Assembly (NCBI GenBank): GCA_051294905.1
Contig: CM119383.1
Location: 21,142,001-21,206,000, forward strand
From: Botryllus schlosseri
Lineage: Eukaryota
Reading direction: 5' to 3'
DNA length: 64,000 nt
Shown here piece after piece: positions 2,077 through 61,225 of this stretch; the first letter of the stretch is position 1; the number at the start of each line of letters is the position of its first letter. The notes under the pieces were generated by a model. That model had not been told where the DNA came from, did not search any database, and saw nothing but the letters and a program-made list of their open reading frames with translations. The position numbers and the translations under genes were made by a program.

Positions 2077-2246
2077 CTGATCGATGCTGTGTTTCTTTTC
2101 GTTTTTCGCGTTCATGTTTACTGTAACGTTTTGTGTCCGCTGTTTTCGTTTACTTAGTTCTGTCGTTTGAAGTATGCTTATTCCGTGACGTTTCCGTTTT
2201 CCGCAGACTGCGTTACGTCTATTGTTATAAAGTCTGACATTTTTAC

Positions 2247-5200
2247 ATGATGGCTGATGGACAAGTGCCGAACGTATCTGTTGTGGGAACTGTCTTGGAG
2301 TATGAGCAGGTATGTGTTCGGTATTGACTTGTACGTCGTGGTTCTAACCTGTTGCGTATGTAGCGTGACGAGCGTCTCGCGATGTCGCAGGAGCGGACGG
2401 CGCAGAGGTTGGCGAGGAGAACGGAACAAGCGGCGGTCTTTTTCGGCGACGAGGTGTTTGACGAACGGGCTGCTGACGACTTGAACGTCGTTGACGGTGG
2501 GCGACTTGCTACGTGGGTGGGAACAAAAGCCTTTAACAGATGCGGTTCGTGCGGGTCGCTCAACAGGCACGTGCTCACGGAGAGCGCTTTTCGGGGAGGT
2601 CGTTCGACTGCCCCGCGCTGCCGTTGTGCGTCGCCAGTCTACCGCATACCTCGCTTGACCGACTGGCCTCACGAGCTAAGACGATTGTCGCCTGACGATC
2701 AGGAAGTTCTGTCCCTGTACAGGTTAGGGTATGGCGTCGTTACGGTCCGACAACATGGATACAGGGTGAAAGACGGGCCTGTCTATGCTGTTAGACGCTC
2801 CGATTCACCGTGGTCTCGCATCGAGAGCATTGACGATGACGAACGCAAGGCCGCTCTCAAAGTGGCGTACGCGTATCTTCGATCGTGCGACAACAGCTAT
2901 TACGGCGCGCTGTGCGACAGATTCGATGGGGGTCACCTACCGGAACGTCTCAATTTTTTGCAGTTGTTCAATTTCCTGCACGTTGAAACTGCGATCTGGC
3001 CGCTCTTGTATCCGTTCAGAGATCTTTGTGAAACCGCTATCAGAGACACGGGTCATCGCCAGAGCGCGAAGGTCTCGTTCACCTTAAAACTCCTGAGCGG
3101 TGTGGCCGATTACCCTGGCACGTATCCTCTGCTGCGTTTTCAATACGATCGGTGAGTCGTTTGCGTGTTGCTCCGATAACCTTGGCGACGTATTCTTTAT
3201 CGCTTGCAGTGGGATGTACAAGACCGTTACCGACGCCGTAACGGTTGCTGGGGCGTTGAGCTGTTCGCCCGCGCACGCCCTTGATGCGAAACAGTTCACG
3301 CCGACGTTTTGGGAGTGGCAGCTGGCGTATGTATTGGACGCTGTGCGTCAGTTGGGATTTCCTCACGTCTTTTTGACTGTTAGTCCGTACGAGTGGACAT
3401 TTCCTTATGCCGGTGACGTCGAGGAACGTATGTCCGCCTTAGGGTGTGGACCGACGCAGTGCGCCGCGTTGGAAACTATAAACGTGGCCCATGTTTTGGA
3501 ACAGGTGCTGAGGGGTTACGTGTCGGGGATAGGCGGTCGTGCACGTTGGAGGACCAACCTGTTCGGAAACGTTCCTTCCGGCGAGTCGAACGTGGTGACC
3601 TTCTTCTATAGGTCCGGAGCACGTTGCGTTTAACATGTATCTATACAGGTTCGAGTTTCAGCGTCGCGGCACCGTGCACGTGCACTATATCGCTTGGCAC
3701 CGTGACATCGAATTGTTCGACATGACGCGCATATCGGCGGATTTCCCTCAAGGCGATCGTGAGTTTGCGTCGTTGGTCTATAGCACACAGAAAAGCCGTT
3801 CGGAGGTTCCTGGCGTCGAGATTCGGTTCGAGCCCAATTCTGTAGAGGTCGTTGGCGATCGTCCGTGCATCCAGCTGCAGCGGTCGGCTCTCGCTCACTC
3901 TGCTAACTTGCGTATATACTCTCCTGCAAACGTGGAATGTTTGCGATGCTCCATGGATATACAGTTCAGCGACGGTAGGGGACTGCTCCTTAAGTACATT
4001 GCTGGCTATGTCGCAAAGTTTTCCGACCACTCGGTTCCTAGAGACATACTATTCAGTTCGGTGGCGGCCCACGCTTTAGCTTCGAGATATATTTCGTGCT
4101 TGTCGCCTGCGGAACCAGAAATGGTGATGGCTCTTGCGGATATCAAAATGGCGTACACCCCCACCGACACCAAAAGATTCCTTGTGCCGAAGCTAGACCG
4201 GTGTGCTGATGACAACGTTGTCAAGGCGTACATGTCTCGTTTTTTGTCGGACGAAGGCATGACGATTGCCGACTATCTGCGTAATTACACCGTCACCCGC
4301 GGGTCCAGCGCCCATAAACGCCGTGCGACCAGACCTGTACTAGTGGGCCTGAAATTCGTGTCCGTTCTGAACGACGCGTATTTCTTTCAAGATGCCCTTA
4401 TGTATACCCCGTTCCGCAGCCTGGAAGACTTGTTCCACGACGCGTACGCCACCTTGCCGTCCGAACTCCGTATGTTTTCCTTTGCTACATGCAACAGGTC
4501 AGAGTTCTGGTCTGACAGGTCTAACATTCTCGAAGTGTGCAGCGTTCGCGGAGATAGGGCCGACTTTGCGGAGACTTTTGTTTCTTGCGTTGCGAGTTAT
4601 TTTCAGGTTTGGAACGGCTACGTCAATGGAATTTTCACGATCGCTGAACTCGGGAATCCGCCGGAGGACGCGTCGGGCCGTATTCCATTGTCGCCGATGC
4701 AATCGGTGTTCGTTGACCAGGTTGTGGCAGCCGTGCGCCGTAGGACGTCTGACGACGTTGAGACCGTGCCCCCTGCAAACGCGGAAAGGAGACCGTACCA
4801 CTTGTTGTGCGGCCCGCACGGTACGGGAAAGTCGTTGTGCCTTAGCCGCGTTGTGGTCCTTTCGCAGGAGGAAGGTGCGCGTGTGCTAGTCGTTGCGCCG
4901 ACCGGACTACTCGTCTCTATCTACAAGGCAAAACTGGGACGCGACGTCACGTGCGAGACCGTACACGCCGCGTTTCTCATAAACGTCGGAGAAGAGGGTT
5001 CGCGTGTCACAAAGGTCAACTGGAGGTTACGTGAGTACGATCTGATCGTCATCGATGAAATCTCTATGATTTCCGTGCGTAACTCCGATCACGTTTACCT
5101 GTGTCTGCGCAACGCTGCTCCCGAAGCCGTTGTCGCTTTCTTTGGGAACCAGCGCCAGCTTCAGCCTGTCGAAGACGATGGCGCTACGGGCAGCATGTTC

Positions 5201-28089: not shown

Positions 28090-28110
28090 AGTATTTGGTT
28101 GTTATAAGGT
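28090..28110 (+). other. 5'-truncated SL-like exon with GT donor
   Basis: AGTATTTGGTTGTTATAAG|GTTCGC, identical to 49882-49906. Followed by gtaagtactaacggcttgtttcag (TACTAAC plus acceptor). Confidence 0.7.
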
Positions 28111-29925: not shown

Positions 29926-29962
29926 AAAACCGAAATAGCAACCCAGCCCTCTCCGCTATTCA

Positions 29963-32349: not shown

Positions 32350-32552
32350 TGCAATCTTTAAACAATAAACAACGACAGCTTTGGGTTCCAAACGAAAGTT
32401 TGGTAAATCCGACAACGATTGACAGGGAAAAAGCGGGAAAAAGCCCTGCTGGGAAGGAGGGAGGGGCCGTTCAAAAACCCCCAGACCACGCGCCACCGCC
32501 GGGAAGCTTTTAACACGCAAACGCAAATATACAACATCACACAACTCCAACC

Positions 32553-32578
32553 ATTGGAGTAGTTGGTTGTACTAAGGT
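32553..32578 (+). other. Full-length SL-like exon with GT donor; degenerate tandem copy at 32606-32629 lacks the donor
   Basis: ccATTGGAGTAGTTGGTTGTACTAAG|GTAC, nearly identical to 46620-46591 on the minus strand. Confidence 0.7.
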
Positions 32579-33193
32579 ACATGAACAACAACCACGCAGC
32601 CAACCATTGAAGTAGCTGATTGCACTAAGATACATGAACAATATGTTCAAAAAATAAGAGCAAACAAATAAGAAGAAACCGTTAAATTAAGTTCACAAAC
32701 CGTTAAACTCCTAAGTTAGGAAATACAAATAATATAAAAATATACAAAAAATGTGTAATAAAGACCCCGGCGGGAGGTAGCCCTATTCTTAGAGAGGGGC
32801 TGCCAAACGCCGGTGGATACGGAGAGCCGTAAAAAAAAAAGTGGAAGGAGCTCCACGTTAGTTAGATTCAGGGTAAGGGTAGGAGCTAGATACAAGTTAG
32901 ATAGGACGCTGGTTATGGCGAAAGACAGGTGCTGCGGAATGGCTGGCGGCCTTCTGGGGGACTTGCCCCCCTGACTCTGGCTGGGGCAATATTTTCGCGC
33001 ATCGCGCGGACGAATTTTTCGCTTGTGCGCGGCTTTCATTGAAAACGCGCCAAGGGGGTGGGGGGTGATAGCGCGATTCGTTTGCGCAACATCTCGGTCA
33101 ATAGCCGGTACCTTCTTCGAATCTGGGTTTCCTCTTGAATCATTGGTCTAGTACCGTTCTTCATTTCCTCATCGTAATTTTCAGAAACAAACG

Positions 33194-38036: not shown

Positions 38037-38477
38037 ATGACTATGTCGAAGCCAAAGGCCGGCGATGGCTATTTCGAACAGACTGTATATCAATTTGACG
38101 CGTCGCAACATCCTGACCTTGTTAAGTTGGAGACGAAGACTTTACCGATTTCTGCCGATTCTGATCCTGGACCTGATCCGGTTCCTGACCCAGACGATCC
38201 AAATGCTTATCTACTGATACCAGCCGACCTGAACCGCGAAGGTCGTAAAACGCTGATAAGTCCTGAGCAGTATATGGCTTGGTATGAAGAAAGGTTTCCT
38301 GGTCAACAGGAGAAGGTCCAGAATGAAGGTGATCTTTTCGAAGGGTCACCGGTACAAGTCTGTCCGGAATTTCTGAAGGATGGCAATGGAGGAAACCTCT
38401 CCGAGGAGGTCAAAGAGACGACGCAGAAAAAACAAGAGGGCGAATCCGCGAAGTTAACGGAGTCTGCTGAACAATGA
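38037..38477 (+). CDS. Orphan family C protein (acidic, Pro-rich, ~146 aa)
   Basis: Open ORF; near-identical core to 63664 (DPNAYLLIPADLNREGRKTLISPEQYMAWYEERFPGQQEK). Confidence 0.7.
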   Translation: MTMSKPKAGDGYFEQTVYQFDASQHPDLVKLETKTLPISADSDPGPDPVPDPDDPNAYLLIPADLNREGRKTLISPEQYMAWYEERFPGQQEKVQNEGDLFEGSPVQVCPEFLKDGNGGNLSEEVKETTQKKQEGESAKLTESAEQ

Positions 38478-38722
38478 TTGCTACCTACAGAACTTACAAA
38501 TCTCTTTAGTCGGAATGACCTCAAACGTTACTTGTGCTTTCTTTTGCCTCCAATTCGTGTCGATCGATACGCATTTGTTTTAGGTATCGGAGTATTTCTG
38601 AATACGTTATTGCTCTACTGTGGTTCGTGAGCGAACTATTTGGGACAATATCTTATTCGTGTTACTATCGTGTCTTATTGTATTTGTTTTCCAGATAATA
38701 CAATACGAGTCTAATAGCTAAA

Positions 38723-40059
38723 ATGTCGTATAGAACTCCAACGAAGAGTCCGTTCGGAAAGGAGAGGAGAAAGAATCCAGATAATGCGGTCGATTGGTAT
38801 CAACATTTCCCTAAAGATTACCTCAGGCCTTACGGCCGCTCAGTCATTCCGGAGGACATATCGGACGAAGCTATCAACAGTAAGTTGCAAACGTTCAGCG
38901 CCGAATGGCTGACCAGGCCGGTGGTAGCGGTGTCAGAGTTTGGCGAAACGCTACTTCGCAATCGCAACACCACGCCCGCTCTCGAGGATATCATGGAGCC
39001 GAGAGCTTTCCAACAGTTTCATGCGCATCTTACTTCCGTGATCAACGAGGTCAGTCCGCTGTGGATAAGCCCGGCGAATCCGGCTAGCGAGGCGACTCTC
39101 ACGAAAAATGACGTTGTGGCGAGATTTGAACGTCTTGAAAGTCTGATGATTCAGCAAAAGTCGTCGTTCCTCAATCGATATATCGATGTGATGGCCGATT
39201 GCGGACACGCCATGTATGTGACTGCGTTACATCTGAAAATGATGTCTTTCCTAATGCGCAACAAAGACGTCTGGGCTCTGAAGTGTCGATCCCACCCCGA
39301 TCACGAGGACTTTAAAAAGAACCCGACCCCTCGCACTTACGCTGAGATCGTCTTTACCGAATACATGATCAAAAAAGAATTCAATGCCGCGCCCATCGAG
39401 ACACCGGCGAGAAGACGCATTTCTGATTTCATGCTCGACGAACCGGCACCTTCCTCTGTGCCCGTGGGTGTTTCGCAATCTCTTCCTACCCAAGCTCCTG
39501 CTCCTGCTCCTGCCCTTGCTTCTGCTTCGGTTCCGTTTCACGGAGGGAGCATCGCCACCCTCCTTTCCAATTCCAGTTTCTGTTCAACATCCGTCACCTT
39601 TCTATCCACCTCCACCTTCCGTACCCGTGCGCATTCGAGTTCCAAACGCTCCCGGAATACTTAGGGCCCCATCCCCAGTTTCTATGCAAGTCCTGAGTGC
39701 TTCTCGAATGTCTTCAAGTGCGGCACCGGTTTCTGGCCAAGTTATTATTGCTGCTCAAGTACATCGAAATCCGGCAGTGGTTTCAGAGGATCCTGTTCGA
39801 TTAGCGCAAGCTCGTCCGATGATTCAAGTTCCGGTGCCGTTTCAACCGGATACCGTACCAGTTGTAAATGTTGCTGGAGCGGCGCTGGAGGACGAAAACG
39901 TTCCATGCTCCAGTGGCAGCGTTCAAAGTCAGCTTGCGTCTGTCCGTGTTAACAAGGAGAAGCGGAGCAATCTTGAGTGTTCCTGACATGGCGGGTAAAC
40001 CAAAGAAGAAGAAAAAGAAACGTAAGAAGAAGAAAAAGAAACGTAAAACTCAAGAATGA
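38723..40059 (+). CDS. Family A protein (copy A4); intact core, frameshifts in Pro/Val-rich tail, Lys-rich end
   Basis: WYQHFPKDYLRPYG...EWLTRPVVAVSEFGETL. The tail continues in shifted frames to AGKPKKKKKK. Confidence 0.7.
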
Positions 40060-40209
40060 ACTGACGTGTTCGATATTTCGTTGCGTTTTTCTGATTTGTC
40101 AAACCTTAACTTTCATTTTCTTTTTCGTTTGTGATGCCTTCGTAACTTTCTCGTTTCTTTTTACAGATTAATAATTGTATAACTAGCTGTTACTCCACTG
40201 AAATACGAT

Positions 40210-40902
40210 ATGAGCAAGCAATCGAAGACATCGTCAAGCCGTCTGCTGTTGTCTGCAGATGACGTTTCACAAGCGAATAGGATCGTTGCCGACCTGCGCA
40301 ATGTATTTCCTGACCATTACTTATTGCGATTCAATTGTCGTCCCACCAATGTTCACCATCAATTGCTCATGTTGGCTCTATACCGAGAGATGACCCGCCA
40401 TCAAGTATTCGTTACCATGATTACTGAATCGTTACGACCTGCGGTAATATTGCCGCAGGATGCGTTGAGTGCCAGCCGTAGTTCTCAAACGTTAACAGCG
40501 TCACTACCGACTGATCTGAATGCTTTTCTACATCGATCCGCTTCTCCGGAGCTTCCAGTATCTTCGGACCTTTCTGTACAAGTGCAGACATCTCCTAAAG
40601 CGGAACGACATTCGTCACCTAATGACCTGCTCAAGGCTCAAGAGCACGATGATGTAGCAACGGTTTCAGTTATGCCACGGAAACGTGTTAAAGTCGAGAG
40701 AAGTTGTCAAACGGAAACTGATATCAGTGGGATGTCCCCGTGTGCATCGAGCGAATCGAGTGAGTCGGATGCATCGGACGAACCGTCTCTGCCGTGTGCA
40801 ATTGACGATTCCACCAGTCAGTCAGCGGCTGTATGCGAACAGCAGAAGCGGACCGCCACTAATGAAGCAGGAAATCAAAAGAAAAAAAGAAAAAATCTGT
40901 GA
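40210..40902 (+). CDS. Hypothetical protein: helical N-terminus, Ser/acidic middle, basic C-terminus
   Basis: 230-aa ORF preceded by a tttttacag acceptor, same architecture as neighbouring cargo genes. No homology recognised. Confidence 0.5.
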   Translation: MSKQSKTSSSRLLLSADDVSQANRIVADLRNVFPDHYLLRFNCRPTNVHHQLLMLALYREMTRHQVFVTMITESLRPAVILPQDALSASRSSQTLTASLPTDLNAFLHRSASPELPVSSDLSVQVQTSPKAERHSSPNDLLKAQEHDDVATVSVMPRKRVKVERSCQTETDISGMSPCASSESSESDASDEPSLPCAIDDSTSQSAAVCEQQKRTATNEAGNQKKKRKNL

Positions 40903-41240
40903 CCTGTGACATGTAACATTTTAAAGTTGCGATGCATTGCTCGTCGATATTGTCATCTCTAACTTTCGTTTTATGTTCATTATCGTGTGTTACGTTCGTT
41001 ATTTCGTTCGGCTGGCTTGCCGCTTTTTGCTTTTTAATGTACCTTCGCTATGCTTTAGCTGATTTCATTTCTTTATTGTCGCACCGATTTATGTGTGTTA
41101 TATCACCTGCAACGTTCGTTACTTGATGTCTTCGTTCAGTACAGATTGATAACTGTAAATACTCGTGTCTTTTGCGAGTACTAACAGTTTCACGCTATTC
41201 TTTATTTTCCAGATAATACAATAACAGTCTGATAGCTAAA

Positions 41241-42467
41241 ATGTCGTATAGAACTCCGACGAAGAGCCCTTTCGGATAGGAAAGGAGGAAGAATCCTGAT
41301 TTCTCTGTCGATTGGTAATCAGCATTTCCCGAAAGATTACCTGAGGTCTTACGGTCGGTCTGTGATTCCGGAAGACGTATCCGACGAGTCTATCAACAGT
41401 AAATTGCAGACCTTTAGCTGCGAATGGTTAATAAGGCCGGCAGTTGCAGTGTCCGAGTTTGCCGAAACGCTACTTCGAAATCGTAACACCACGCCTGCCT
41501 TCGAGGATATCATGGATCCGAGAGCTTACCAACAGTTCCACGCGCATCTCAATTCCGTCGTCAACGAGGTCGGTCCTCTGTGGATAAGCCCAGCGAACCC
41601 GGCTAGCGAGGCGACTCTTACTAAAGAAGACGTGTCGGCGAGGTTCGAACGCCTTGAAAGTCTGATGATTCAGCAAAAGTCGTCGTTCCTGGATCGATAT
41701 ATCGATGTCATGATCGATTGCGGACACGCCATGTGTGTGAGTGCGCTCCATCTCAAAATGATGTCGTTTTTGATGCGCAACAAAGACGCATGGGCCCTCA
41801 AATTTAGATCCCATCCCGACCACGAGGACTTTAAAAAGAACCCGACCCCTCGCACTTACGCTGAAATTGTCTTTACTGGCTACATCATCAAGAAAGGCTT
41901 CAATGCAGCGCCGATCGAGACCCGGCTAGAAGACGCATTTCCGATTTCATGCTCGACGGTCCATCATCCCCGTCTGTGTCGGTGCGAGTCGTTCCAGATG
42001 TTCGATCTCCTGTTTCGGCTCAAGTTCCGCCAGCTCCCGTTCTGTCTCAAACACAGGCACCAGTTCGTGTACAAGAGCATGGTGTCGCCTATCCTGTCGT
42101 GCAGATACCTGTTCCTGTTCAGGTCACGCATCATTCACAATCCCCTCTTTCTTCCGTACAGTTGGCATCGGTTCCGGTTACTCGTCCTGTACAGAATGCT
42201 GCTCGAATGGTTCCGACACTGGATCGATCGGATACCGAGCTGTATGTACCTGCTAGTCAAACCGTCAGGGAAGCTGCTCCTTTGTCGACTAATCAATCGG
42301 TCTCGTCAACATCTGTTCCAAGTGCTGCATCTGATGAGGAGAACGTAGCATGTTCCAGTGGTAAAGTGCAAAGTAAGTCCGCATGTGTCGGCGAATCGAA
42401 GAAGCGAAGCAAAGTTGACAAGGCGGGAAAGCAAAAGAAGAAGAAGAAACATATAATTCTGGAGTGA
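41241..42467 (+). pseudogene. Family A pseudogene (copy A5), recent paralog of A4
   Basis: Very similar DNA to 38690-39430; TAG at codon 13, small indels. Confidence 0.85.
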
Positions 42468-42852
42468 TGTCGTACGCATATCGTATTGTTGCATTTGTGG
42501 ACTCAGTTTCGAGCCGTAAATTTCCCTACCTTCCATACTCATGTCGTGTGTTACGTTTAGTAATTCTTTTAGGTTTATTACTGAAATGCTTCGCTGAACG
42601 CCCGTTACTTTTTCGTTGTAGTAGGCTACTCGATTTAAACAGCTTTTCCTTCATAACGTATTTTGTCATAATGTAAATATTGCTTCAATTTGTTTCGTTC
42701 TTTTTCCAGTTGCTAGTAACAGTTGCTGTGGCATGATACAAGTCGGACTCGAATGACGTGGTTTTGACTCGAAAACGCAAGTTAAGTGGCCCTGGAAAGG
42801 GCCGATGGTTTTATCAAGAAGGAAACGCTGCACAATATTGCAGATTCCATGT

Positions 42853-45800
42853 TTAAGTTCCCTCTGCTGGCTTGAAATGGCTGTTTCTCGGTGGAATGAG
42901 AAAACGAAGGTTGTCGCGTCGACGAACGCGGGAAATTGCAACGTACGCACATCCAGCACTCAATCTTGGACGATCGAACCATACGATTACCTTATTGAGT
43001 GTTTGGCCTTGGACCTTGTGAATGGTTGTGGCGTAGGCCAAGTCAATTGGGTAGTAAGTCCCTTCTGGCGACGTAATTGGATACACGCGGATCAAGTGAC
43101 CGCTGGAGATCTTCAGAAGTATCGTGTGCCCGACGACGGCATGAATCAAACCGCACTGGCCGTTGACATACCCCCTGCGTTTTTGCCGATTTTCAGTAAT
43201 CACAACACGCATTCCGAAATAGACAGGTTGCAAGTTCGATTCAGCTGTCGGATACCTAACTTGAAGAAGCGGTAACGAGCGCGCGAAGATCTTATTTCGT
43301 ACAGCCAAGTTGTATTGCCGCGATGTTTGACGGGTAAAGGTCAAAACCTTGAAGTCAGCGTGTTTGTCATAGCGTGTTTGTCATATATTGCTACAAGAGC
43401 CTCGTCCGAAAAATCGGGCGTGTCTTGCAACACCAATCCCTCAGCGAATCGCGATTACGATTCTGCCGACGGTCGCTGAAGCCGACATTCATTCAAAAAG
43501 GTAGAGAGGACCACATCCGTTGTACGAAACTGTTGCAATAGGGTGGTCTTGTCGCATTTGCTCAATATACCGCGATGAGAAAAAAGACTACCGATTACGC
43601 CGTCAACGGGAACTGGCTGTAATTGCCATTTGTCCCCGCATAGAACGACGACCGATCGATCAGATATGAATGAGAGGGTCGTCGATATATGATCGCCGTG
43701 GGTGAGCGATATCAACGATATCTCGTCGATCAGGATCAAGTCATACTGTCGCAGCTGCCAGTTCATTCGGGATTCCGAGCCCTCGCCTACACGCAATCCG
43801 AAAGCCGCGTGAACCGTATCTGTACTTAGTTGGTTTCCGAATGCAGTCTTGTACGTTGTAGCCAAAAGACCGGTCGGTGCCAACAACAAGACTCTGCATG
43901 CCATAGCCAAACCCGGACGGATGATTTCTTTGATACAAATAGATTTTCCGGTGCCTGGAGATCCAACGAGTAGATGGTACCGATCATGACCATCGTCATT
44001 TTCGTCCAGTATTGCGGGATCCATTCGTCTGTGCAGTCGATGGACGACGCAGTTGACGAAAGCGGCTTGCATGGGTGATAAAGTCGTTGCCGGAGCAACA
44101 ACGAGATCCGTTACATTCAATTCATCGAAGGTGAATGTTCCTTCGTAATGCTCATTCCAGACCTGGAATAAGCTCACCACATAAGACCACAACGTAAATA
44201 TATAGTTACTCCGACATGCTTTCTGTTGGCAGACTAATGTAATGGAATTCCTGTCCTGCCAAAAGCTTGCCCTGTTATGGACAGCAAAAGAAAACATCTT
44301 GATGTCTGCAGGTAACGTGTCAAAAAGAGGATGAACTAATTCCGAAAGCTTGCGGAAGGCCACATTCATTAGCGCGTCTTGGAAAAAATAAGTGTTGTTG
44401 AATAGGTCAACAAACTTGACTCCAAGCAGTAGCGGTTTAGTAGCGCGTCGGGGATGAGATTGACAGCGAGCCACCGTGAAATTTCGGAGGAATTCGAACA
44501 GCGTCATACGCTCGGCACTAGGCATCCTGTTGCAATAGGCTTTGACGATGTCATTTGTCTGCGCGCGCTCAAAAGTGGGAACTAAGAATCTTTTCGTGTC
44601 AGAGCATGTGTACGCCATCTTTACATCGCTCAAAAGCGCTATCATTTCCGGCTCTGCGGGAGCCAAATTGCGTAGATATCGGTAGGCAACGCTTTGTGCC
44701 GACAGGTCGGAAAACAGCACCTCACGCGGAACGTTATGTTCCCGAAATTTAGATACGTATGATGCAACATACTTCAACAACATGGTCTGGCCGTCCGTCA
44801 TCTGAACATCCATTGAACACCTCAAGGCCTGTGTTAGTGAAGGGATGTAAACCCGCAAATTAACAGAATGGGCGCGTTCCGAACGTTTCAGCAACAACAC
44901 TTGCGATCCAGAAATAAAGTCGATGACGCTCGGTTGTTCGCGCACCTCTAAACCTCTTACGGGCTGTCTGCTTTTCTGCGTATTGTATACTATATCGCAA
45001 AACTCCGCGTCGCGTTCTGGAAAATCTGCGCAAAATTGTCCTATATCTACTTTTGCGGGATCCCACAACCAGGCTAGATAATGCACGTGCAAGGTGCCGC
45101 GTTGCTGAAATTCATACCTATAAAAGTATGTTTTTACGTTGCACCCCGGCGAGTTGGCATCACGCAATACGTTTTGGCGCCAGTCTCTCTTGCCCCGGCC
45201 TGACACGAAATGCCGCATGACTTCTGTCAGTACATGTGCGATATGTAATGTCTCCAGAGCTGCTAAATCCGTGGGTCCTTTAGCAAGAGCGTCCATTCTA
45301 TTGGCGATCACGTCGGAAGAAGGAAAAGTCCACTCGTAAGGGCTTACTGTAATAAATACGTCTGGAAATCCGTACTGACGCACGGCATCCACGATAAAAC
45401 TTAACTGCCACTCCCAGTATGTTGGGGAGAACGTTTTGGAATCTAAAGCTCTCGCCGGAGAGCAGTCAAGTGCCCGAGCGGTAGATATCGCACCCGATAT
45501 GGTTTTATAGAGCCAGCGATCGAATTGAAAACGAAGCAGCGGGAAGCATGCCGAGAAATCTAAAACTCCCGACAAAATTTTCAAGAGGTGCGACTTCTTT
45601 GCGCTTTTCCGGTCCCCGGAATCGGTTATGGAAGTCTCGCACATCAACAAATGGATAAAGAATAGGCCAAATGGCGGTTTCAACAAATTTGAAACTGAAC
45701 AGCTGGTCGCAGTTCAGCGTTCTAGGCAGCTCGCTGTTATCGTGCTGTCTAATAAGCTGGCCATACGCACTCTCTGGAGAGGCACACAAAAATTCATGAG

Positions 45801-46250
45801 CTCTTTCTAGACGTTGCCGACGTACGTCGCACGACACAGCAGCAATGCTAGATTCCACGGAATGACTACGAATGGTTGCGTAAACCGCACCGTCCTTTGA
45901 TCTATAACCGTGTTGCCTTATGGCGTTCGATCCGTAATGCAGTTTGTAAATCGAAAGGACTGTCATGTCGTTAAAAGTCAAGCCGCGTATTGATTCGGGC
46001 CAACTTTCAAGCACAGGCACCGAGTAATTCGCATTACTGCAAGCGCACTTACCGGCCGGCAAAAACCTTCCTCGTAAGGCAGCTTCGGACAGCCCCCTGG
46101 TATATGCTGATCCACAACGTTGGCATTCGATCCACGCGCCAGTCGAAATCCAGGCAGCCAGCTTTACTCCTGCTTCAATATTAACGTCGGCTTCCTGCCG
46201 AGGCGGTATTACGATGTCTCCAAAATCGTTCCAATGCCGCTCATTCTGGC
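42853..46250 (-). pseudogene. Second Helitron-type Rep-helicase, decayed
   Basis: EFQQRGTLHVHY, YVASYVSK, GSPGTGKS, ILIDEISL and TIHKVQGQTL. Frameshift at ~45642, in-frame TAA at 43455 and a 14-nt duplication at ~43357-43384. Confidence 0.9.
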
Positions 46251-46592
46251 AGTGGATAGAGATACAGTAGGATAGTAACTTGTAGGTAACCAACTCAGCT
46301 GCTCACTCAACGCACCAACAAATCCAACTGATCGAAATTCAGTAATTCTGGGTACTCATGATCTAACGCGGCAAAACGGAAACGAGAGATCCCAGTTAGT
46401 CATAAGCTTACGCGCCACAACAGAAACGAGAGATGCTTGGTATGAATTACGCGGCAACCATATCGCGTGAACAAAACTTGATTTCATGTCACACCGACTC
46501 GCCTCATTTGCATAACGCGAGAACAAAACAAACTTGATTTCATGTCACAACGACTCGCCTCATCTGCATATCGCGTGAACGAAACTTGCCGT

Positions 46593-46618
46593 ACCTTATT
46601 ACAACCAAATACTCCAAT
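46593..46618 (-). other. Full-length SL-like exon with GT donor upstream of Rep-helicase 2
   Basis: Minus strand reads ccATTGGAGTATTTGGTTGTAATAAG|GTAC. GC-box (ggggcggggg) and cacgtca lie upstream on the same strand. Confidence 0.75.
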
Positions 46619-47519
46619 GGCTATCGCCGCAGAAAGAGGCAATATTTTCATTTGTGGTGCAAACGCTGCCCATCCGTCGCGAGCGGTTGATCCGTTTTTG
46701 TTGGGCCTCCCCCGCCCCTCCTACCCTGACGTGATTTTTCTCACTTTTTGCTTATAGGTTTTTGTTGGGTTGGCCAAACTTTCGTTTGGAACCCAACTTT
46801 ACGAGTTCTTGTGAATTATTCTTCTTTTTTTGTTCTTGTGAATTATTCTTCTTTTTTTTAAAGAACCTTTGATATGAATATTACGGTAGAGTCGACCAGA
46901 TCGTTACTTGGCGTCAAATACAACAGATCAGATCGCGATCATGTCGGATATGGAACAATATTTTCCTTCGCCTAAGTTCGCGACTTACGTCAAACCTTAT
47001 TCTTCAACCCTAAAACTTGTTGCCTTGCCAAGTCACTCTATTGTTTACTGCACATGACACATTCCCTCACTAAATGCGACCAATTAGGACGAACCAAAAT
47101 GGTCTGGACTCGACTGCGAATCGCAGGAGTCGAATACCTATCAGACGCTGTTTCTGCTGAATATCATCTGTCGACTTGTATCTATTGAGCAAAGAGCCGT
47201 GAATCGGTGCGGTGCATTTTTATTAAAAGCCAAATAAACCCAAACAATAATGACAAACAACAACGTTTCGAACACATCAATTTGTATGCACATTTCACAC
47301 AGACGAGCTTCGTCTAATCGCCAGCGTCTTTTCTCGCCTGATTTCGATACGAACAACTTGCAGGTCATATAGCTTCGTGCAAAAGCGATATGGTCTACGA
47401 AGTCATACTTATTGATTCACTTGTGCGTTGACAGAAGGCAAAATACTTCGACGGAGGAGCGGATAACGTCTGAAGTGTGCAAATCAGGTGTGACGTGCTG
47501 ACGTAGATAGTATCGACAA

Positions 47520-49790
47520 TAGGGCAAAATTCAGCGCAGCATAGTTCAAAGTACACCCATACGACGCCGAATTTTTCCATATTGAATCACGTATTTGTCA
47601 TTGTATGATCGTCGAGTTCAGCGCGATGAATAGCGATAGACCAGGACTCTAGGAGAAGCGTATCGTGTCTTATGCGTATACTGAACGATGCGATCGACCG
47701 GAATGTCTGCCATGGGATGTAGTTCGACGATTGGGTGCCACAAACAGACATCCCATGCACCTCGGGCGGGCTGGGAGCGGTTGTGACGTCATAATGAGTA
47801 AAATCCGTTATTACATGTCACTATTATGGTAACTCCAGTGTTAGATCTACTTATACGAGTTTCATAGACGTGTCTCTTTCTTGTGGACACAAATATTATA
47901 TAACTTTTCTGACACCCTATAGTTCCAGACATGGTAGACATTTCATTTTGGTGTCATTGGAAAGGTGACAAAAAAGTCTCCAAACGTATTTTTTTTTGAG
48001 TCGCTACTTCAAGTACTTTTCGAGTAGTGGCTTTGTAAAGTAGTTTCAATGTAGTTTCAACGTTTTTAGTGCTATCGACTTCATTTTTGTATCGTTGAAT
48101 ACTCGTCGCAAGACCAGTCTTCAGTCAAAGTATCAAGTAGATTCGTCAAGTAGTTTTGGAGTAGTGGCCGTGTAAAGTCGTAGTTTCAATGTATTTTCAA
48201 CTTCGTGAGTGCTGTCGACTTCATTTTTGTATCGTACATTACTTGTTGCAAGACCAATCTCCAGTCCAAGTATCAAGTAGATTCGTCAAGTACTTTTCGA
48301 GTAGTGGCCGTGTAAATTAGTAGTTTCAATGTACTTTCAACGTCGTGAGTGCTATCCACTTCATTTTTGCATCGTTTAAAACTTGTCGCAAGCCGAATGT
48401 TCAGTCCAAGTATCAAGTAATTTTGTCAAGTAACAAACATCTTATAGTCTTTTTAATGTTTCAGCAATGTTTTTGGCCATGTTTTGGTGGCTGTAGAGAG
48501 TTGATTTTCTCAATTCTGAATGCTCTCGTCAAGACCTATCTTCAGTACAAATTTCAAGTGGATTGGACCACGTGGAAAGAAGTTATGAATTTCGCGTTTT
48601 TGACCATGTTTCTGTGGTGCTCGAGAGTTGATTTTCTCAATTCTGAATGCTCTCGTCAAGACCTATCTTCAGTACAAATTTCAAGTGGATTGGACCACGT
48701 GGAAAAAAGTTACGAATTTCGCGTTTTTGACCATGTTCCCGTGGTGCTAGAGAGTTGATTTTCTCAATTCTGAATGCTCTCGTCAAGAGCTATCTTCAGT
48801 AAAAATTTCAAGTGGATCGGACCACATGGAGAAAAGTTATACCAAAATATCGTTTTTACCATGTTTTGGTGGTCCTACAGACTTGATATTTTCACTTCTG
48901 CAAGCTCTCGTCAAGAGCTATCTTCAGTAAAGATTTCAAGTGGATCGGACCACGTCGAGAAAAGTTATACGAAAATATCGCTTTAGACCATGTTCTGGTG
49001 ATCCTAGAGACTTGATTTTTTCAATTATAAATGCTCTTGTCAAAACCTATCTTCAGTAAAAATTTCAAGTGGATTGGACAAGTAATAAAAAAGTTATAGT
49101 ATTTCTAATGTTTTTCGAAGCTATTTAACCATGTTCTGTGGGTCCTAGCGACTTGATTTTTTTTCTGGAAAGGGCGGGAAAAGGCGATTAATCAATGTGA
49201 ATTTCAAGTCAATCCGAGCACGAAATCTAATTATTTTCAGGAGCCCTCATTTTCGAAAAACCATGTTCTGGTGGCATTAGAGAGTTAATTTTTATTTTTC
49301 TGGAAAGAGCTCCGAAAGGCGATTAATCTATGTAAATTTCAAATAAATCGGCCAACGTTTACTATTTTTCCAAGTACGAAATGTGTTCGAAAAAAAAACT
49401 TGAATGTTTTCTGTGATCTCCTTTACTTTTTACAGTATCGCCTCGGGAAAGGTGGCGTTCGAAAGATGTGTGTAAGAAGAATCCAGACGTTTTGGAATTA
49501 TCACGATAGCTATCACGGCCTCCAAATGACAGCCATTTCAAAATGACTGTTTTTCCGGACGAAAAAGTCGAGTTTTTTTTTCCCAAAAAATCTGAAATTT
49601 TCGCCCCCCCCCCCCAGCCGAAGTTTGGAGTGTCTAGGACCAACTCCAGCCATTCTAGCCATTCTACCATGCTACAGCATAGGCCCTGGACCTATGTGTA
49701 CCCCGGTCGTTTTCGAGTTACAGTAGGTCAGTGACCCACCGAAAGTAACCGCGAGTGAACCGTTCCAGAACTTTCTCGGAATTTCGCGCA
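47520..49790. repeat. Module non-coding block, copy 2 (about 5 units of the 127-bp satellite)
   Basis: Colinear with 25720-28085 and 58040-61180. Confidence 0.85.
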
Positions 49791-49852: not shown

Positions 49853-49875
49853 TGATTTGACTGTTGAAGTGGAAG

Positions 49876-49902
49876 GATTGGAGTATTTGGTTGTTATAAG
49901 GT
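49876..49902 (+). other. Full-length SL-like exon with GT donor
   Basis: GATTGGAGTATTTGGTTGTTATAAG|GTTCGC; second partial copy GAGTGTTTGGTTGTTATAAG|GC at 50180-50201. Confidence 0.75.
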
Positions 49903-50739
49903 TCGCATCTCGTCGAGGCAGGTGTCTTTTAGCTTGTTTTTCCAGATTAAAATACGCTAGTTGTGGTTTGCCGCTGTGGCAACGCTGTTTTAAAATATAA
50001 CAGTAGACAGGACGTGATTTTTATAGACCTAAAATTTTTTTTTTTTGATGGTACGTCTTCCATAGGTTCCCTTTTAACACCGGAGGTAAAATACAGAACC
50101 GTGACTTAATCACGGTTCTGATAAACCTATTGGCGTATTTGGTGGAAAAGAGACTGCTATTTAGCAGATAAAATAAGCAGAGTGTTTGGTTGTTATAAGG
50201 CTATATAGAGTACGCCTACATAAGGCTATATAGAGTACGCCTACAACCAACGAACGAACGAAGAATAAAGCTGCAACGACGACAACGACCGCCGACCGCT
50301 GCAACCTGCCGCCGACCGCCGACCATCGCCGATCGCTGCCAGCTGCCGCCGACCGTCGACTGCCGACCGCTGCCAGCTGCCGCCGACCGCCGACCACCGC
50401 CGACCGCCGCCAGCTGCTGCCTGCCGCCGACCGCCGCCAGCTGCTACCTGCCGCCGACCGCTGCCAGAACGCCGCCGACCGCCGCCAGCTACTACCTGCC
50501 GCCGACAGACCGCTGCCAGAACGCCGCCGACCACCGCTCTCGACCTCCTCCGCAGGCTACTATACATACCTTAAGAAGCCTAAGAATAAAGACTAAAAAA
50601 GAGGACAAGACCTCCTCTAACGCGGCGAACATCCTGCGGACAAGAACTCCGCAGGACACACCGTTCACGCTCCTGCGGAATAAACACCCGCACGGAAACA
50701 ATGGCCACCGCGAACCTCTACACACATCGGCCATGATCT

Positions 50740-51789
50740 TTGGATGTGACAGTCCCAGATGGAATGACAATCGCAGAGGTATACTCTGCCATAATGGACT
50801 ATACACCATTAAAAAACATAACGGACTACATAGAATCTATATACCAAATTGGACTTAAAACCTTCAACATCACCATCTATGACATGGAAAGTACACAAAA
50901 CATCAAAAAAGAACTCTTGGATATGACAAAAAATGGAATCAGAACATCATACGGAATAATCGAGATTGAGAACGCACAGGAACCCTATCAGGCAATAAAC
51001 ATTCGAGCTATCCCAACCGAAGCCACGGACCGAGAAATCACAGAACTCATAGAAAAAACGGGATGCGGGAAAGTCACGAAAATAATTAGAATAATGCACC
51101 GTGGGACAAAAGTCCACAATGGATACCGCAGAATTCAAATTCAAAAGTACAAAAGGGGACACCTCCCCCTCTTCCTTAACATCAGAGGCCTCTCCTGCAA
51201 AGTCTTCTACCCGCCAGGAGAGTATGAACCGGAATGTTTCCGATGCCTACAGAAAGGACACACAGGGCGAAATTGCACAAACGAAACAATCTGCCTTGAA
51301 TGTAAGAACACAGGACACCGAAGAGCAAACTGCCCTGAATTATTAACTGAATATCCTACACTACATGAGGCGAAACAAACAAAAACGACGAAAAAAAGCG
51401 AAGAAAGAGAACAAATAAATACACCCCCTGCCGAAGAAAACAATGAAAAAATGAATGAAAGCATGCCTTCTCTCGAAGGATATGAGGAAACTTTAAACGA
51501 AAGCAGACCTTCTCTTGAAGGAAACGATGAAAATACAGACGAAAAAACACAACAAGAGACACAACAAAGCGAAGAAAAGATCCTTCCAGACCTGACAGAA
51601 AGCTCTTCAGAAGAAAGCAAAGCTGAAAGCGAGGAAGGAACAGATCTCTTTGAAATATCGACCGGGAAGGAGCACTCCACCCCGGAAGATATGGCATGTC
51701 TAGCAAAAAACAAAAGAGCAGATGACCCTAAGGAACCATCCGACTCTTTGAACCCCCCGAATTACCACCGAGAAACAGGAATAGAGTAA
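50740..51789 (+). CDS. LINE B ORF1 (tail may continue in a shifted frame to ~52124)
   Basis: CFRCLQKGHTGRNC and CLECKNTGHRRANC; homologous to 28630 ORF1 (INIRAIPTE vs VNIRAVPTE). Confidence 0.85.
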   Translation: MDVTVPDGMTIAEVYSAIMDYTPLKNITDYIESIYQIGLKTFNITIYDMESTQNIKKELLDMTKNGIRTSYGIIEIENAQEPYQAINIRAIPTEATDREITELIEKTGCGKVTKIIRIMHRGTKVHNGYRRIQIQKYKRGHLPLFLNIRGLSCKVFYPPGEYEPECFRCLQKGHTGRNCTNETICLECKNTGHRRANCPELLTEYPTLHEAKQTKTTKKSEEREQINTPPAEENNEKMNESMPSLEGYEETLNESRPSLEGNDENTDEKTQQETQQSEEKILPDLTESSSEESKAESEEGTDLFEISTGKEHSTPEDMACLAKNKRADDPKEPSDSLNPPNYHRETGIE

Positions 51790-52035
51790 AAGGATTGTCA
51801 AATATACCCCCAGGAGACGAGGCCTTCCAAATCCAGATTTTCAAACATGTAGAACAAAGTCCTTTACCAGCAGAACAAAGAATAAAAGACAGCCCGAGGA
51901 TAAAAAGAGTATATCATAGCAGCCCTGAGGAAAAAAGCGACAAAAATAAAAAAAATAAAGAAAATAAACGTCAAAACACTCGAAGAACAAAAGAAGGAAA
52001 GCAAATGGAAAACCCTATTATCTTTTATCGTTCAA

Positions 52036-54687
52036 ATGGAAGGCCACACAACCAATCCAGCCTCTCAGAAGAAAATCTACGACGCAAAAGGGCTTCAATG
52101 TACCCTGATATCGATAAATGTTAACGGCCTAAATCGAAAATGGGAAACATTCAAAATATTTATAAAAGAATCTAAAGCAGACATCTACTGCATTCACGTA
52201 GTACATAGAATGCAAAAACAGAAAATTGCAAACTGGGCAAATCAAAACTCGTTCACATACTATAAAAACTTCGATTCGGAAGCCTACCAAGGAAAGGGAA
52301 AACATTACCTAGGGACCGTCATTCTTGTAAAAAAAAACTTGGCAGAGAAATACACCATCCAGCACAAGATTATAATCGCTGACCGCGCCCAGGAACTCCA
52401 ACTAGACAGAGAGGGAGAATCCATACGCGTAATAAACATCTATGCACCAACTACGGCAACACGCGAACAAAATGAATTCTGCCAAGAACTTAAAGATCAC
52501 ATGGACAAGAGAAATGACACTACCATAGTAGCTGGAGACTTCAACATGGTCACGGAAAAGATAGACAGTGAGAAGCAAGCTGCATTCAGAATGACGAAGG
52601 GGGCGGAAACGTGGAAGAGCTTGATGAAGCAAATCTCGTTACTAGACATTTATAGATGGCGAAAACCATACACCAAGACCTTTTCCAATATAAACAACCT
52701 CAACTCAAGACGCATAGATAGAATCTACGTGTCAAAAACCCTAGCAACAATGGTGACGATGGCAGAATATAAAACAACCTGCATATCAAACCATCTATAT
52801 GCAATCATGAAAATAAAGCCCAAATCGCCACAAAAATGGGGAAGAGGAACATGGAGAAATAACATCTCTCATCTCCAAAACGGCAAATACAGAGCAACAA
52901 TAGAAAACTTGTACACCGAGTTTGATATGGAAAAAACAAACTACGCAAGTATAGCTGAATGGTGGGACAGCTTCAAAAAGAAGGTCAAAAAATTCTCTCT
53001 CTTTCGGAATCGAAGAAAAAAGAAAACAAAACCAAAAACAAACAGCTCTTGAAAACAAACTACAATCACCTTCCATAACATCCGAAGAAAGGGAAAAAAC
53101 AATCCAAGAGCTGAAAGAGCTAGAGAAAAAACGACTCGACGCAATCATGAAGTTCGAATACAGAGAGCAACTGGAGAAAGGAGAAAAACCTACGCACCAG
53201 TTCTACGAACATCTCAAAGAGAAAAAGCTGAGAAAAACAATCACACGCTTGAAAGATAGTACCGGAAATACAACGGCAGACAAAGAAAAAATAATAAACA
53301 CAATACATGGCTTCTATACAGACCTTTGGAATGACGAACAGACCGGAGACCCAAACCTACAAAGAAACCTGATTGAACTACTAACAAAAAAAATACCACC
53401 TGAAAACAGAATACTACATGACCTCCCAATAACCGAATTAGAAATACAAGATGCTCTAAAAGCACAGGCAAACAATCGATCACCCGGACCGGATGGAATT
53501 TCGATCGAATTCTACAAAACTTTCTTTCAAATCCTCAAGCACGACCTTCTCCAAATATATAATAACGCTCTCCTATTCGGAAGTACAGCAAACACATGGA
53601 ACGAGTCGAAAGTCACTTTGATCTTCAAAAAAGGGGACCCTGAAGACCTAAAAAACTGGAGGCCAATATCCCTAGCCGACGCTGACTATAAGCTGCTCAC
53701 AAAAATAATCGCCAACAGAATTCGAAAAGACCTAGGCGAAGTTATCACTCCCACGCAAAAGTGCGCGATAGAAGGGAGACAAATTACGGACGCGCTGCAA
53801 AACATCCAAGCAGCGATAAATCACAGCAATGACAAGAAATCGCCACTAGTAATAACAAGCATCGACCAAGAAAAAGCATTCGACCTTGTCCCGCACAAAT
53901 ACCTCTGCGGCGTCATAAAAAAGCTCAATTTCGGCAAAAAAATGACAAAATTAATCGAGAACATCTACGAAAGAGCTGAAAGCAGAGTCGACATCAACGG
54001 TACCCAGACCAACCAAATACCGCTAAGAGAGGACTCCGCCAAGGTTGCCCCTTGAGCATGAGTCTATACGCCCTCTCCGCCGAACCAATGACCCAGAGGT
54101 TCCTACAGAATAACAAAATCAAAGGAATAAAACTGGCAAACCTGCAGCTCAAATTGCAGCAATATGCCGACGATTGGACGATATTAACCAAAGACCTGGA
54201 ATCAATAGAATATGCCCTTGAAGAAATGAAATTCTTAGAACAAGCAACAGGACAAAAGATAAACCAAAAGAAAACCGAAATACTAAACTTGAACAACCCA
54301 AAAGACCCAATCAGAAGTGAAAAATACAAGGAAAACATCAAGAACACGATCAAGATACTCGGCCAATATTACGGAGAAGACCAGAGTAAACTAACATGGA
54401 ACACTGTCATCTCAAAAATAGAGAAAGCCACCCGATTTAACAACCAACGGAACCTGACGTGGTACGGAAAGAAAATGATCATAAACGCAATGATTTCGCC
54501 GAGAATAACGTACCACGCAAGAGTAACACCACCAACTCCAGAAGTCATTGCGAAAATGACAAGAATAACATTTAACTTCCTCTGGCACCCTGAAAAGATA
54601 GAGAAGATCGCGCGACACAAGCTCATAAGAGGAATAAAGAACGGCGGACTAGACATCCTGCACCGGGCAGACACCGAACAAATCTAA
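52036..54687 (+). pseudogene. LINE B ORF2 (APE + RT), frameshifted at ~53050 and ~54050
   Basis: ISINVNGLN, VAGDFN, RRIDRIY, NWRPISLADADYK, DQEKAFD and QYADD. Confidence 0.9.
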
Positions 54688-54689
54688 AA

Positions 54690-61185: not shown

Positions 61186-61225
61186 GCGTGACATCCTGTT
61201 CGTTTTCGTCTTTTCAGATATCATT

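What the first reader, a model, noticed from the sequence alone, without database searches (positions are those of the whole stretch)
46250..46760. SL-like exon is the apparent first exon of Rep-helicase 2
Seen on the minus strand, in order: GC-box and cacgtca, SL-like exon with GTAC donor (46618-46591), ~56-bp repeats, a gactaac branch-like site with a gttag acceptor (~46373), and a second acceptor ccactgccag at ~46248 opening the Rep-helicase reading frame. Inference: the transposase mRNA starts with a genomically templated SL exon, mimicking a trans-spliced host message.
Basis: partly seen in the sequence, partly recalled or inferred. Interest (0 to 1): 0.75.

Follow-up and report, generated by a model that had tools for sequence, protein, structure and literature searches.

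The report
Spliced-leader-like module beside decayed Helitron gene
A near-copy of the sea-squirt spliced leader, with its own promoter-like signals and a splice donor, lies 232 bases upstream of a broken Helitron transposase gene, but it belongs to a small repeated module also found away from any transposase, so it is more likely a stray spliced-leader gene copy than a built-in first exon.

Summary
On the minus strand, 46619-46595 matches the published stolidobranch-ascidian spliced leader (SL) at 23 of 25 bases. It is followed by GTAC, 56-bp repeats, a GACTAAC/pyrimidine/AG acceptor and then the Rep-helicase.

Corrections:
- The coding sequence starts at ATG 46359, three bases after the first acceptor.
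- The "second acceptor" closes a 53-nt phase-0 intron that the window's other Rep-helicase shares.
- This copy is a pseudogene: a shift after the ATG, an intron donor reading CT, and two body frameshifts.

- The SL-like exon is the 3' end of a 206-bp module: hairpin, G-rich box, TATA-like box at -29, SL exon, GTAC.
- A second, inverted copy at 32381-32580 precedes an unrelated gene.
- Homology between the two copies stops 4 nt after the exon.
- The sister Rep-helicase has the same ATG-proximal acceptor but no SL-like exon in 2.2 kb upstream.
- ATG-proximal acceptors are general in this window.

No other copy of this Helitron family could be retrieved, and no transcripts exist.

Best reading: a dispersed module derived from an SL RNA gene, upstream of a normal trans-splice acceptor. 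Cis-splicing is anatomically possible but unproven.

The parts
46764..46797 (-). Hairpin at the 5' edge of the 206-bp module A. The 21-nt core GGGTTCCAAACGAAAGTTTGG lies at 46794-46774, and flanking bases extend the stem.
   Evidence: The 21-mer occurs exactly twice in the window (46774-46794 minus, 32383-32403 plus) against 0 expected. Homology with module B starts here.
46709..46733 (-). cacgtca (46733-46727) and the G-rich GC box (46718-46709).
   Evidence: Read directly. Only the G-rich character is shared with module B.
46641..46648 (-). TATA-like AAAATATT, about 29 nt upstream of the first A of the SL-like exon.
   Evidence: The k-mers AAATATT (module A) and CAAATAT (module B) both start at -29 relative to ATTGGAG.
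46595..46619 (-). SL-like exon CATTGGAGTATTTGGTTGTAATAAG.
   Evidence: It matches the published stolidobranch SL at 23 of 25 bases. There are five close copies in the window against 0 expected. It differs from the TTATAAG version carried by the three LINE-linked copies.
46591..46594 (-). GTAC, the 5' splice-site dinucleotide plus two bases. This is the last stretch shared with module B.
   Evidence: No homology is detectable downstream: best local score 18 against a shuffle mean of 18.9.
46459..46585 (-). 56-bp tandem repeat, 2.0 copies plus a partial third, filling the putative intron.
   Evidence: TRF score 189 at 91% identity. Families D1 and D2.
46353..46434 (-). 44-bp direct repeat, two copies. 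Each copy carries a pyrimidine tract, an AG and an ATG-like triplet. The upstream copy supplies GACTAAC (46401-46395). The downstream copy supplies the acceptor AG (46364-46363) and ATG 46359.
   Evidence: Family D3, 82% identity. Sequence read.
46299..46359 (-). First coding exon of Rep-helicase 2. ATG 46359 is followed by a 1-nt frame slip, then VPRITEFRSVGFVGALSEQ.
   Evidence: Frame-0 translation. It is homologous to Rep-helicase 1 exon 2247-2309, which reads MMADGQVPNVSVVGTVLEYEQ.
46246..46298 (-). 53-nt phase-0 intron ending in ccactgccAG. Its first two bases are CT instead of GT.
   Evidence: Removing it joins ...SEQ to NERHWNDFGD... in frame. The counterpart in Rep-helicase 1, 2310-2363, runs GTATGT...TCTAAC...TAG.
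42853..46245 (-). Body of Rep-helicase 2 (Helitron-type Rep plus SF1 helicase). Frameshifts lie near 45646/45641 and 43353/43347.
   Evidence: Pfam Helitron_like_N, AAA_30, AAA_19 and PIF1. About 45-60% amino-acid identity to Rep-helicase 1. Frame changes without gaps against P0001 and P0006.
32381..32580 (+). Module B, the second copy of the 206-bp module, in inverted orientation. A degenerate tandem second SL-like copy follows at 32606-32631.
   Evidence: 67% identity over 206 nt. Alignments. It is followed by an 88-nt satellite and ORF family F1 at 33194-33859, not a Rep-helicase.
2189..2363 (+). Comparison locus in Rep-helicase 1: the shared acceptor motif (2189-2204, AG at 2205-2206), ATG 2247, first coding exon to 2309, and a 54-nt intron 2310-2363.
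   Evidence: No SL-like motif lies in 1-2246.

Best explanation
The SL-like exon is the 3' end of a 206-bp module derived from a spliced-leader RNA gene. The module holds a hairpin, a G-rich box, a TATA-like box at -29, the SL exon and a GT donor. In other words it is a dispersed SL RNA gene copy or pseudogene of a stolidobranch-type ascidian genome.

It lies 232 bp upstream of a Helitron Rep-helicase gene and on the same strand. That gene's ATG-proximal 3' splice site is an ordinary SL trans-splice acceptor, inherited from the common ancestor of the two Rep-helicase lineages in the window.

Shown here:
- The SL identity of the motif.
- The module and its second copy.
- The conserved acceptor, first coding exon and intron in both Rep-helicases.
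- The decay of Rep-helicase 2.

Inferred:
- The acceptor normally receives the leader in trans.
- The module is not an evolved part of the Helitron.
- If transcription from the module ever ran on, cis-splicing to that acceptor would give an SL-leader mRNA as a by-product.
For: - The motif matches the SL of Botryllus, Halocynthia, Styela and other stolidobranchs at 23 of 25 bases.
- Seven SL-like sites cluster between 28 and 50 kb of the window.
- Module A is 67% identical over 206 nt to module B. The two sharpest identity peaks are the hairpin and the SL exon, each 23 of 25. Only 13 of 5000 permutations reach this.
- Both modules carry a TATA-like box at -29 from the first A of the leader.
- Module B precedes a satellite and an unrelated gene.
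- Homology stops 4 nt after the exon.
- Rep-helicase 1 shares the motif CGTTTCCGTTTTsCCGC..AG, the first coding exon and the phase-0 intron. It has no SL-like exon upstream and sits 130 nt behind another ORF, an operon-like layout.
- Four copies of gene family F1 have a conserved acceptor 8-10 nt before their ATG. Only one of them has a module upstream.
- A bona fide SL RNA gene of this leader family, found in a tandem unit with a full U2 snRNA, shows what a working gene looks like: the canonical exon followed by GTAAGT.
- SL RNA pseudogenes with donor sites are reported as 'rife' in Ciona (PMC7986045).
Against: - Neutral pseudogene decay should erode the exon as fast as its flanks, yet the exon and donor are the best-conserved part.
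- Loss of homology exactly after the donor in both copies is what a promoter-plus-first-exon cassette would show.
- No Sm-site-like element or SL-RNA-like fold is evident downstream. Fold z-scores are +0.74 and -1.05.
- Both modules point at a downstream gene with an ATG-proximal acceptor, at 232 nt and about 600 nt.
- The SL RNA gene of the source species is unknown, so descent from it is inferred from the exon alone.
Confidence: 0.5

Rival explanations
1. The module is the promoter and first exon of this Helitron family's transposase gene, perhaps captured from an SL RNA gene. It is cis-spliced across the 232-nt repeat-filled intron to the acceptor at 46363. The mRNA then carries an SL-like leader without trans-splicing.
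For: - The order and spacing of signals are complete: TATA-like box at -29, exon, AAG|GTACGG donor, ACTAAC 33 nt before the AG, and ATG 3 nt after the junction.
- Conservation between modules A and B covers exactly promoter, exon and donor and nothing after.
- SL-like exons followed by GT and a short intron-like stretch also sit at the 5' side of LINE sequences, at 28085 and 49875.
- Helitrons are known from the literature for capturing host gene fragments (own knowledge).
Against: - Only one Rep-helicase copy shows the arrangement, and that copy is broken.
- The sister lineage lacks it.
- Module B serves no Rep-helicase.
- The acceptor predates the module and is of the general trans-splice type.
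- The branch-like site is simply the diverged upstream copy of a 44-bp duplication of the ATG region.
- No transcripts and no other family copies are available.
Confidence: 0.25
2. Modules A and B are the inverted ends of one composite element of about 14.4 kb, 32381-46796. Each end drives transcription inward: B towards F1 and the two ORF-U genes, A towards the Rep-helicase.
For: - The two modules are in inverted orientation and each starts with the identical 21-nt hairpin core at its outer edge.
- ORF-U homologues accompany both Rep-helicases: 583-2076 next to Rep-helicase 1, and 38723-39664 and 41362-42348 next to Rep-helicase 2.
Against: - The ends are only 67% identical.
- No target-site duplication is seen at the outer edges. 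The flanks read ...gacagct and ctttacg....
- Long terminal inverted repeats are not a Helitron feature (own knowledge).
- F1 and ORF-U copies also occur elsewhere in the window without such ends.
Confidence: 0.1
3. Modules A and B are working genes for a variant SL RNA that donates its leader in trans. Their position next to the Helitron is incidental.
For: - The exon, the donor GT and the TATA spacing are conserved between two copies that are otherwise only about 60% identical.
Against: - The two copies share no intron moiety.
- No clear Sm-type site or stable fold is present.
- The leader differs by 1-3 bases from both the canonical SL and the window's TTATAAG version.
- Rfam gives no match, although Rfam may not hold a tunicate SL family.
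Confidence: 0.1

Closest known systems
Dispersed SL RNA pseudogenes of Ciona (Yeats et al. 2010, as summarised in PMC7986045)
   Same: Both are tunicate genomes. Both have SL-like exons with a GT donor scattered outside the main SL RNA gene repeat.
   Different: Here two copies share 180 nt of upstream sequence with a hairpin and a TATA-like box but nothing downstream. One of them sits just before a transposase start codon. The species and leader family differ: a 25-nt stolidobranch leader against the 16-nt Ciona leader.
Bona fide SL RNA / U2 snRNA tandem repeat recovered from metagenome contigs L005 and L006
   Same: It holds the same leader family (ATTGGAGTATTTGGTTGTATTAAG) followed by a GT donor.
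   Different: The real gene has the canonical exon and a consensus GTAAGT donor. It sits in a tandem unit of about 1.3 kb with a full U2 gene scoring 165 bits. Modules A and B are single, diverged and next to mobile elements. No promoter motif is shared.
Helitron capture of host gene fragments and promoters (own knowledge of the Helitron literature)
   Same: A host-derived promoter and exon fragment lies at the 5' side of a Rep-helicase gene.
   Different: The Helitron termini could not be located. Whether the module lies inside the element is therefore unknown. The captured piece would be a small-RNA gene rather than a protein-coding exon.
SL-gene-associated retrotransposons (SLACS, CZAR and CRE in trypanosomatids, NeSL-1 in nematodes) and SL relics in dinoflagellate genes (own knowledge)
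   Same: Mobile elements and SL sequences are physically linked. In this window, LINE 5' regions begin at or just after SL-like sequences.
   Different: Those elements interrupt SL exons using a restriction-like endonuclease, or carry SL relics without a donor. Here the element next to the finding is a DNA transposon, the exon keeps its donor, and the LINEs are of the APE type.

Membership tests
Spliced-leader RNA gene (tunicate, stolidobranch leader family) | The exon is identical or near-identical to the leader found on mRNAs. | tested here: inconclusive
   It matches the published leader at 23 of 25 bases. The leader of the source species is unknown. Three other window copies carry a different 3' version, TTATAAG.
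Spliced-leader RNA gene (tunicate, stolidobranch leader family) | A GT splice donor lies directly after the exon. | tested here: met
   AAG|GTAC at 46594-46591. Module B has the same.
Spliced-leader RNA gene (tunicate, stolidobranch leader family) | A conserved intron moiety with an Sm-binding site and stem-loops. | tested here: not met
   No homology exists downstream of the donor between the two module copies. The folds are no better than shuffles. Only weak AAGUUUYG-like strings are present, compared with the Ciona motif AGCUUUGG.
Spliced-leader RNA gene (tunicate, stolidobranch leader family) | Its own promoter places the transcription start at the first base of the leader. | tested here: inconclusive
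   A TATA-like box sits at -29 in both copies. No transcription data exist. No motif is shared with the real gene in L005.
Helitron (rolling-circle DNA transposon) | One protein combining a Rep (HUH-type) domain and an SF1 helicase. | tested here: met
   Pfam finds Helitron_like_N plus AAA_30, AAA_19 and PIF1. Full-length relatives of about 1220 aa align across the whole gene.
Helitron (rolling-circle DNA transposon) | Defined termini: 5' TC, and 3' CTRR preceded by a hairpin. | tested here: inconclusive
   No terminus was recognisable downstream of the stop codon. No non-coding similarity exists between the two Rep-helicase loci. The module's hairpin is not followed by CTRR.
Cis-spliced first exon of the Rep-helicase gene | Transcripts join 46595 to 46362. 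| not testable with these tools
   No transcript data for the source genome are available. The window's proteins are absent from the public collection.
Cis-spliced first exon of the Rep-helicase gene | The exon is present in other copies or lineages of the same gene family. | tested here: not met
   It is absent from the 2246 bases upstream of Rep-helicase 1. It is also absent from four public relatives with 2.8-8 kb of upstream flank, L001, L002, L008 and L009. Those relatives are only 36-48% identical and their hosts are unknown.

The most novel reading that the evidence does not exclude
In this ascidian genome, mobile elements of different classes carry a genomically encoded copy of the host spliced leader as a first exon with its own donor. 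The cases are this Helitron and at least one LINE family, at 28085 and 49875. Their mRNAs would then acquire an SL-type 5' leader by ordinary cis-splicing, imitating trans-spliced host messages.
Probability: 0.2. Interest if true: 0.8.

Novelty: new member of a known kind. Interest (0 to 1): 0.4.

Why it matters
If the module is only a stray SL RNA gene copy, the locus is ordinary. It adds one more SL pseudogene beside a dead transposon. It also gives a tidy example of a Helitron gene with a conserved trans-splice acceptor and a conserved 5' intron.

If transcripts prove that the SL-like exon is cis-spliced onto the transposase, the case changes. It would be the first DNA transposon shown to hard-wire the host's spliced leader. 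That would bear on two questions: how parasites exploit leader-dependent translation, and how SL RNA genes and ordinary first exons can interconvert.

Tried and rejected
Searches that led nowhere:
- Other copies of the Helitron family. The 743-aa piece finds nothing above 48% identity. The N-terminal piece finds nothing at all. Ten exact look-ups of window proteins are all absent from the collection.
- Upstream flanks of four distant relatives, L001, L002, L008 and L009. None holds an SL-like or hairpin motif.
- Collection scans for the leader and the hairpin. Viral contigs gave 0. Genome contigs gave only a chance Bacteroides hit. Metagenome contigs gave three chance hits plus the useful SL/U2 repeat.
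- Relatives of LINE 1 ORF1, wanted in order to inspect their 5' ends. Five Logan contigs were found, but their DNA could not be delivered.
- Rfam gives no family match anywhere in the window, and no tRNAs are present.
- Folding of the putative SL RNAs is not better than shuffles.
- A shared promoter motif with the real SL gene and the U2 gene of L005 was not found.
- Helitron termini or shared non-coding ends between the two Rep-helicase loci were not found.
- Pfam on 20 ORFs of the 28-43 kb region identified only LINE domains.

Ideas rejected:
- The motif is a chance match.
- ATG 46244 is the start codon. It is out of frame, and homology with Rep-helicase 1 places the start at 46359.
- A LINE lies directly upstream of module A. 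No LINE similarity is found there.

The single large profile search was deliberately not used. The word search had already found the nearest relatives.

Full report
**1. What is there**

- cacgtca at 46733-46727 and a GC box at 46718-46709;
- a 25-nt SL-like exon at 46619-46595, followed by GTAC at 46594-46591;
- a 56-bp tandem repeat at 46585-46474, with a partial third copy to 46459;
- a 44-bp direct repeat at 46434-46353;
- GACTAAC at 46401-46395, 33 nt before the AG of gcgttAG at 46364-46363;
- ccactgccAG ending at 46246.

The window has no N and nothing suggests human sequence.

**2. The motif is a real spliced-leader sequence**

A literature search on the motif led to the published "Chordata" leader GATTGGAGTATTTGGTTGTATTAAG. 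It is recorded for Botryllus schlosseri, Halocynthia roretzi, Boltenia villosa, Herdmania curvata, Polyandrocarpa misakiensis and Styela plicata (PMC3795323). The site at 46619-46595 matches it at 23 of 25 bases.

Five close copies occur in the window against 0.00 expected. A looser scan gives seven, all between 28 and 50 kb. None is identical to the canonical leader:
- the finding has ...GTAATAAG;
- its sister copy has ...GTACTAAG;
- three LINE-linked copies have ...GTTATAAG.

The best Rep-helicase relatives with a source name are from Ciona and Phallusia. The host is therefore very probably an ascidian, likely a stolidobranch or a near relative. Its genome is not in the protein collection.

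**3. A reference for a working gene**

A metagenome scan for the leader returned two 1.45-kb contigs, L005 and L006. They are tandem units of about 1.3 kb that hold the canonical leader followed by GTAAGT, together with a complete U2 snRNA gene (Rfam 165 bits). A bona fide SL RNA gene of this leader family thus looks different from the copy in the window. It has the canonical exon, a consensus donor, and sits in a tandem array with another snRNA gene.

**4. The exon belongs to a 206-bp module with a second copy**

Region 46796-46591 (minus) is 67% identical over 206 nt to 32381-32580 (plus).

Both copies start with the same 21-nt hairpin core, which occurs exactly twice in the window. Both carry a G-rich box. 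Both have a TATA-like AAATAT starting 29 nt before the first A of the leader. Both end with the leader plus GTAC.

Identity is uneven. The hairpin and the leader each reach 23 of 25, while the rest is 55-65%. Only 13 of 5000 permutations reach this.

Downstream of GTAC there is no detectable similarity: best local score 18 against a shuffle mean of 18.9. Neither the cacgtca motif nor the exact GC box is conserved in the second copy.

The second copy is followed by a degenerate tandem duplicate of the leader, an 88-nt satellite and an ORF of family F1 at 33194-33859, not by a Rep-helicase.

**5. Revised gene model of Rep-helicase 2**

The two Rep-helicases in the window are 45-60% identical at the protein level over their whole length. 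Both match Helitron_like_N and SF1 helicase families.

Comparing their 5' ends shows a shared structure.

| Feature | Rep-helicase 1 (plus strand) | Rep-helicase 2 (minus strand) |
|---|---|---|
| Acceptor | ...ttttccgcAG at 2205-2206 | gcgttAG at 46364-46363 |
| Start codon | ATG 2247 | ATG 46359 |
| First coding exon | 63 nt, to 2309 | to 46299 |
| Intron | 54 nt, phase 0, GTATGT...TCTAAC...TAG at 2310-2363 | 53 nt, 46298-46246 |
| Next exon | continues in frame | from 46245 |

The two first-exon peptides are alignable (...QVPNVSVVGTVLEYEQ against VPRITEFRSVGFVGALSEQ). The second exons begin RDER... and NER... respectively. The acceptor tracts share CGTTTCCGTTTTsCCGC. That score is 27 against a shuffle mean of 20, sd 2.3, max 29, so it is weak alone and is supported mainly by position.

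The reading frame opens right after the first acceptor.

Rep-helicase 2 is broken in four places:
- the ATG is 1 nt out of frame with its exon;
- the intron starts with CT;
- a frameshift without a gap lies near 45646/45641;
- another lies near 43353/43347.

Assembly errors cannot be excluded for single-base shifts.

**6. What the acceptor most likely is**

Rep-helicase 1 has no SL-like sequence anywhere in the 2246 bases before its start codon. Instead, another ORF (ORF-U, 583-2076) ends 130 nt before the acceptor, an operon-like layout.

Four copies of the unrelated F1 family have a conserved TTTTCAG acceptor 8-10 nt before their ATG, and only one of them has a module upstream.

ATG-proximal acceptors are thus a general feature of genes in this window. 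That fits a genome that trans-splices a leader onto many mRNAs, as reported for at least 58% of expressed Ciona genes (PMC7986045). The simplest reading is that the Helitron acceptor is an ordinary trans-splice site older than the module's arrival.

**7. Weighing the models**

- The signals are complete and well spaced.
- Conservation between the two modules covers exactly promoter, exon and donor.
- Both modules point at a gene with an ATG-proximal acceptor.

Against it:
- There is only one broken example.
- The exon is absent from the sister lineage and from four distant relatives.
- A module copy exists with no transposase behind it.
- The branch-like site is just the upstream copy of a 44-bp duplication of the start-codon region.
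- SL pseudogenes with donors are common in at least one tunicate.

Neither copy looks like a functional SL RNA gene. They share no intron moiety, and no Sm-like site or fold stands out.

I therefore rank the models as follows:
- an SL-RNA-gene-derived module lying fortuitously upstream of a trans-splice acceptor, 0.5;
- a cis-spliced, possibly captured, first exon, 0.25;
- a composite element with inverted module ends, 0.1;
- a working variant SL RNA gene, 0.1.

**8. What could not be done**

- No other copy of this Helitron family is retrievable.
- Helitron termini were not found, so it is unknown whether the module lies inside the element.
- LINE relatives exist in two Logan runs, but their DNA was not delivered.

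Noticed in passing
window 50129-56400 (+): An APE-type LINE with a CCHC ORF1, endonuclease and RT, broken by frameshifts. Its 5' region begins with an SL-like sequence joined directly to LINE sequence (…GTTATAAG|GCTATATAG, no GT donor). This is what retroposition of a trans-spliced RNA would leave. A half-leader (ATTGGCGTATTTGGT) lies 47 nt further upstream.
   Followed up: partly
window 28085-32300 (+) and 49875-49960 (+): Two more SL-like exons are followed by GTTCGC and a short intron-like stretch ending in CAG. One is 31 nt long and contains GTAAGTACTAAC. The first sits about 540 nt before the ORF1 of a second LINE, only 30-46% identical to the other LINE. Its leader is cut at base 8, exactly where similarity to a repeat ('X') ends. 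Similarity between the two downstream stretches is marginal: score 23 against a shuffle mean of 17.8, max 32.
   Followed up: partly
window 25615-28047, 47343-49788, 58094-61188: A large repeat complex 'X', with 127-bp tandem units and poly-C/poly-T/poly-A runs, occurs three times. Twice it is followed by an SL-like exon and a LINE, and once by an F1 gene. This suggests either an old segmental duplication or a preferred insertion site.
   Followed up: partly
window 19775-20392, 21092-21691, 33194-33859, 57674-58040, 61211-61819, 62741-63340: A six-copy ORF family (F1, about 220 aa) with no Pfam match. Most copies are preceded by an 88-nt satellite and by a conserved ATG-proximal acceptor.
   Followed up: partly
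window 583-2076, 38723-39664, 41362-42348 (also 17526-17735, 21663-21938): ORF-U family, with a conserved N-terminal region of about 200 aa and a K/R/S-rich tail in the first copy. It has no Pfam match. Copies lie next to both Rep-helicases, directly upstream in operon-like fashion for Rep-helicase 1. It may be a Helitron-borne accessory gene.
   Followed up: no
window 3153-3213 and about 3612-3632 (+): Rep-helicase 1 has a clean 61-nt intron (GTGAGT...GATAAC...TTGCAG) that Rep-helicase 2 lacks. It also has a frame change near 3612-3632, so it may be damaged too.
   Followed up: partly
L005 1-1453 and L006 (metagenome contigs Ga0181600_10127346, Ga0181599_1084197): An environmental contig is a tandem unit of about 1.3 kb that carries the canonical stolidobranch SL exon with a GTAAGT donor together with a full U2 snRNA gene. 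This is presumably the SL RNA gene array of an ascidian sampled in a metagenome.
   Followed up: partly
window 46805-46858: A perfect 27-bp tandem repeat (two copies, A-rich on the minus strand) abuts the outer edge of the module's hairpin. Its origin is unknown.
   Followed up: no
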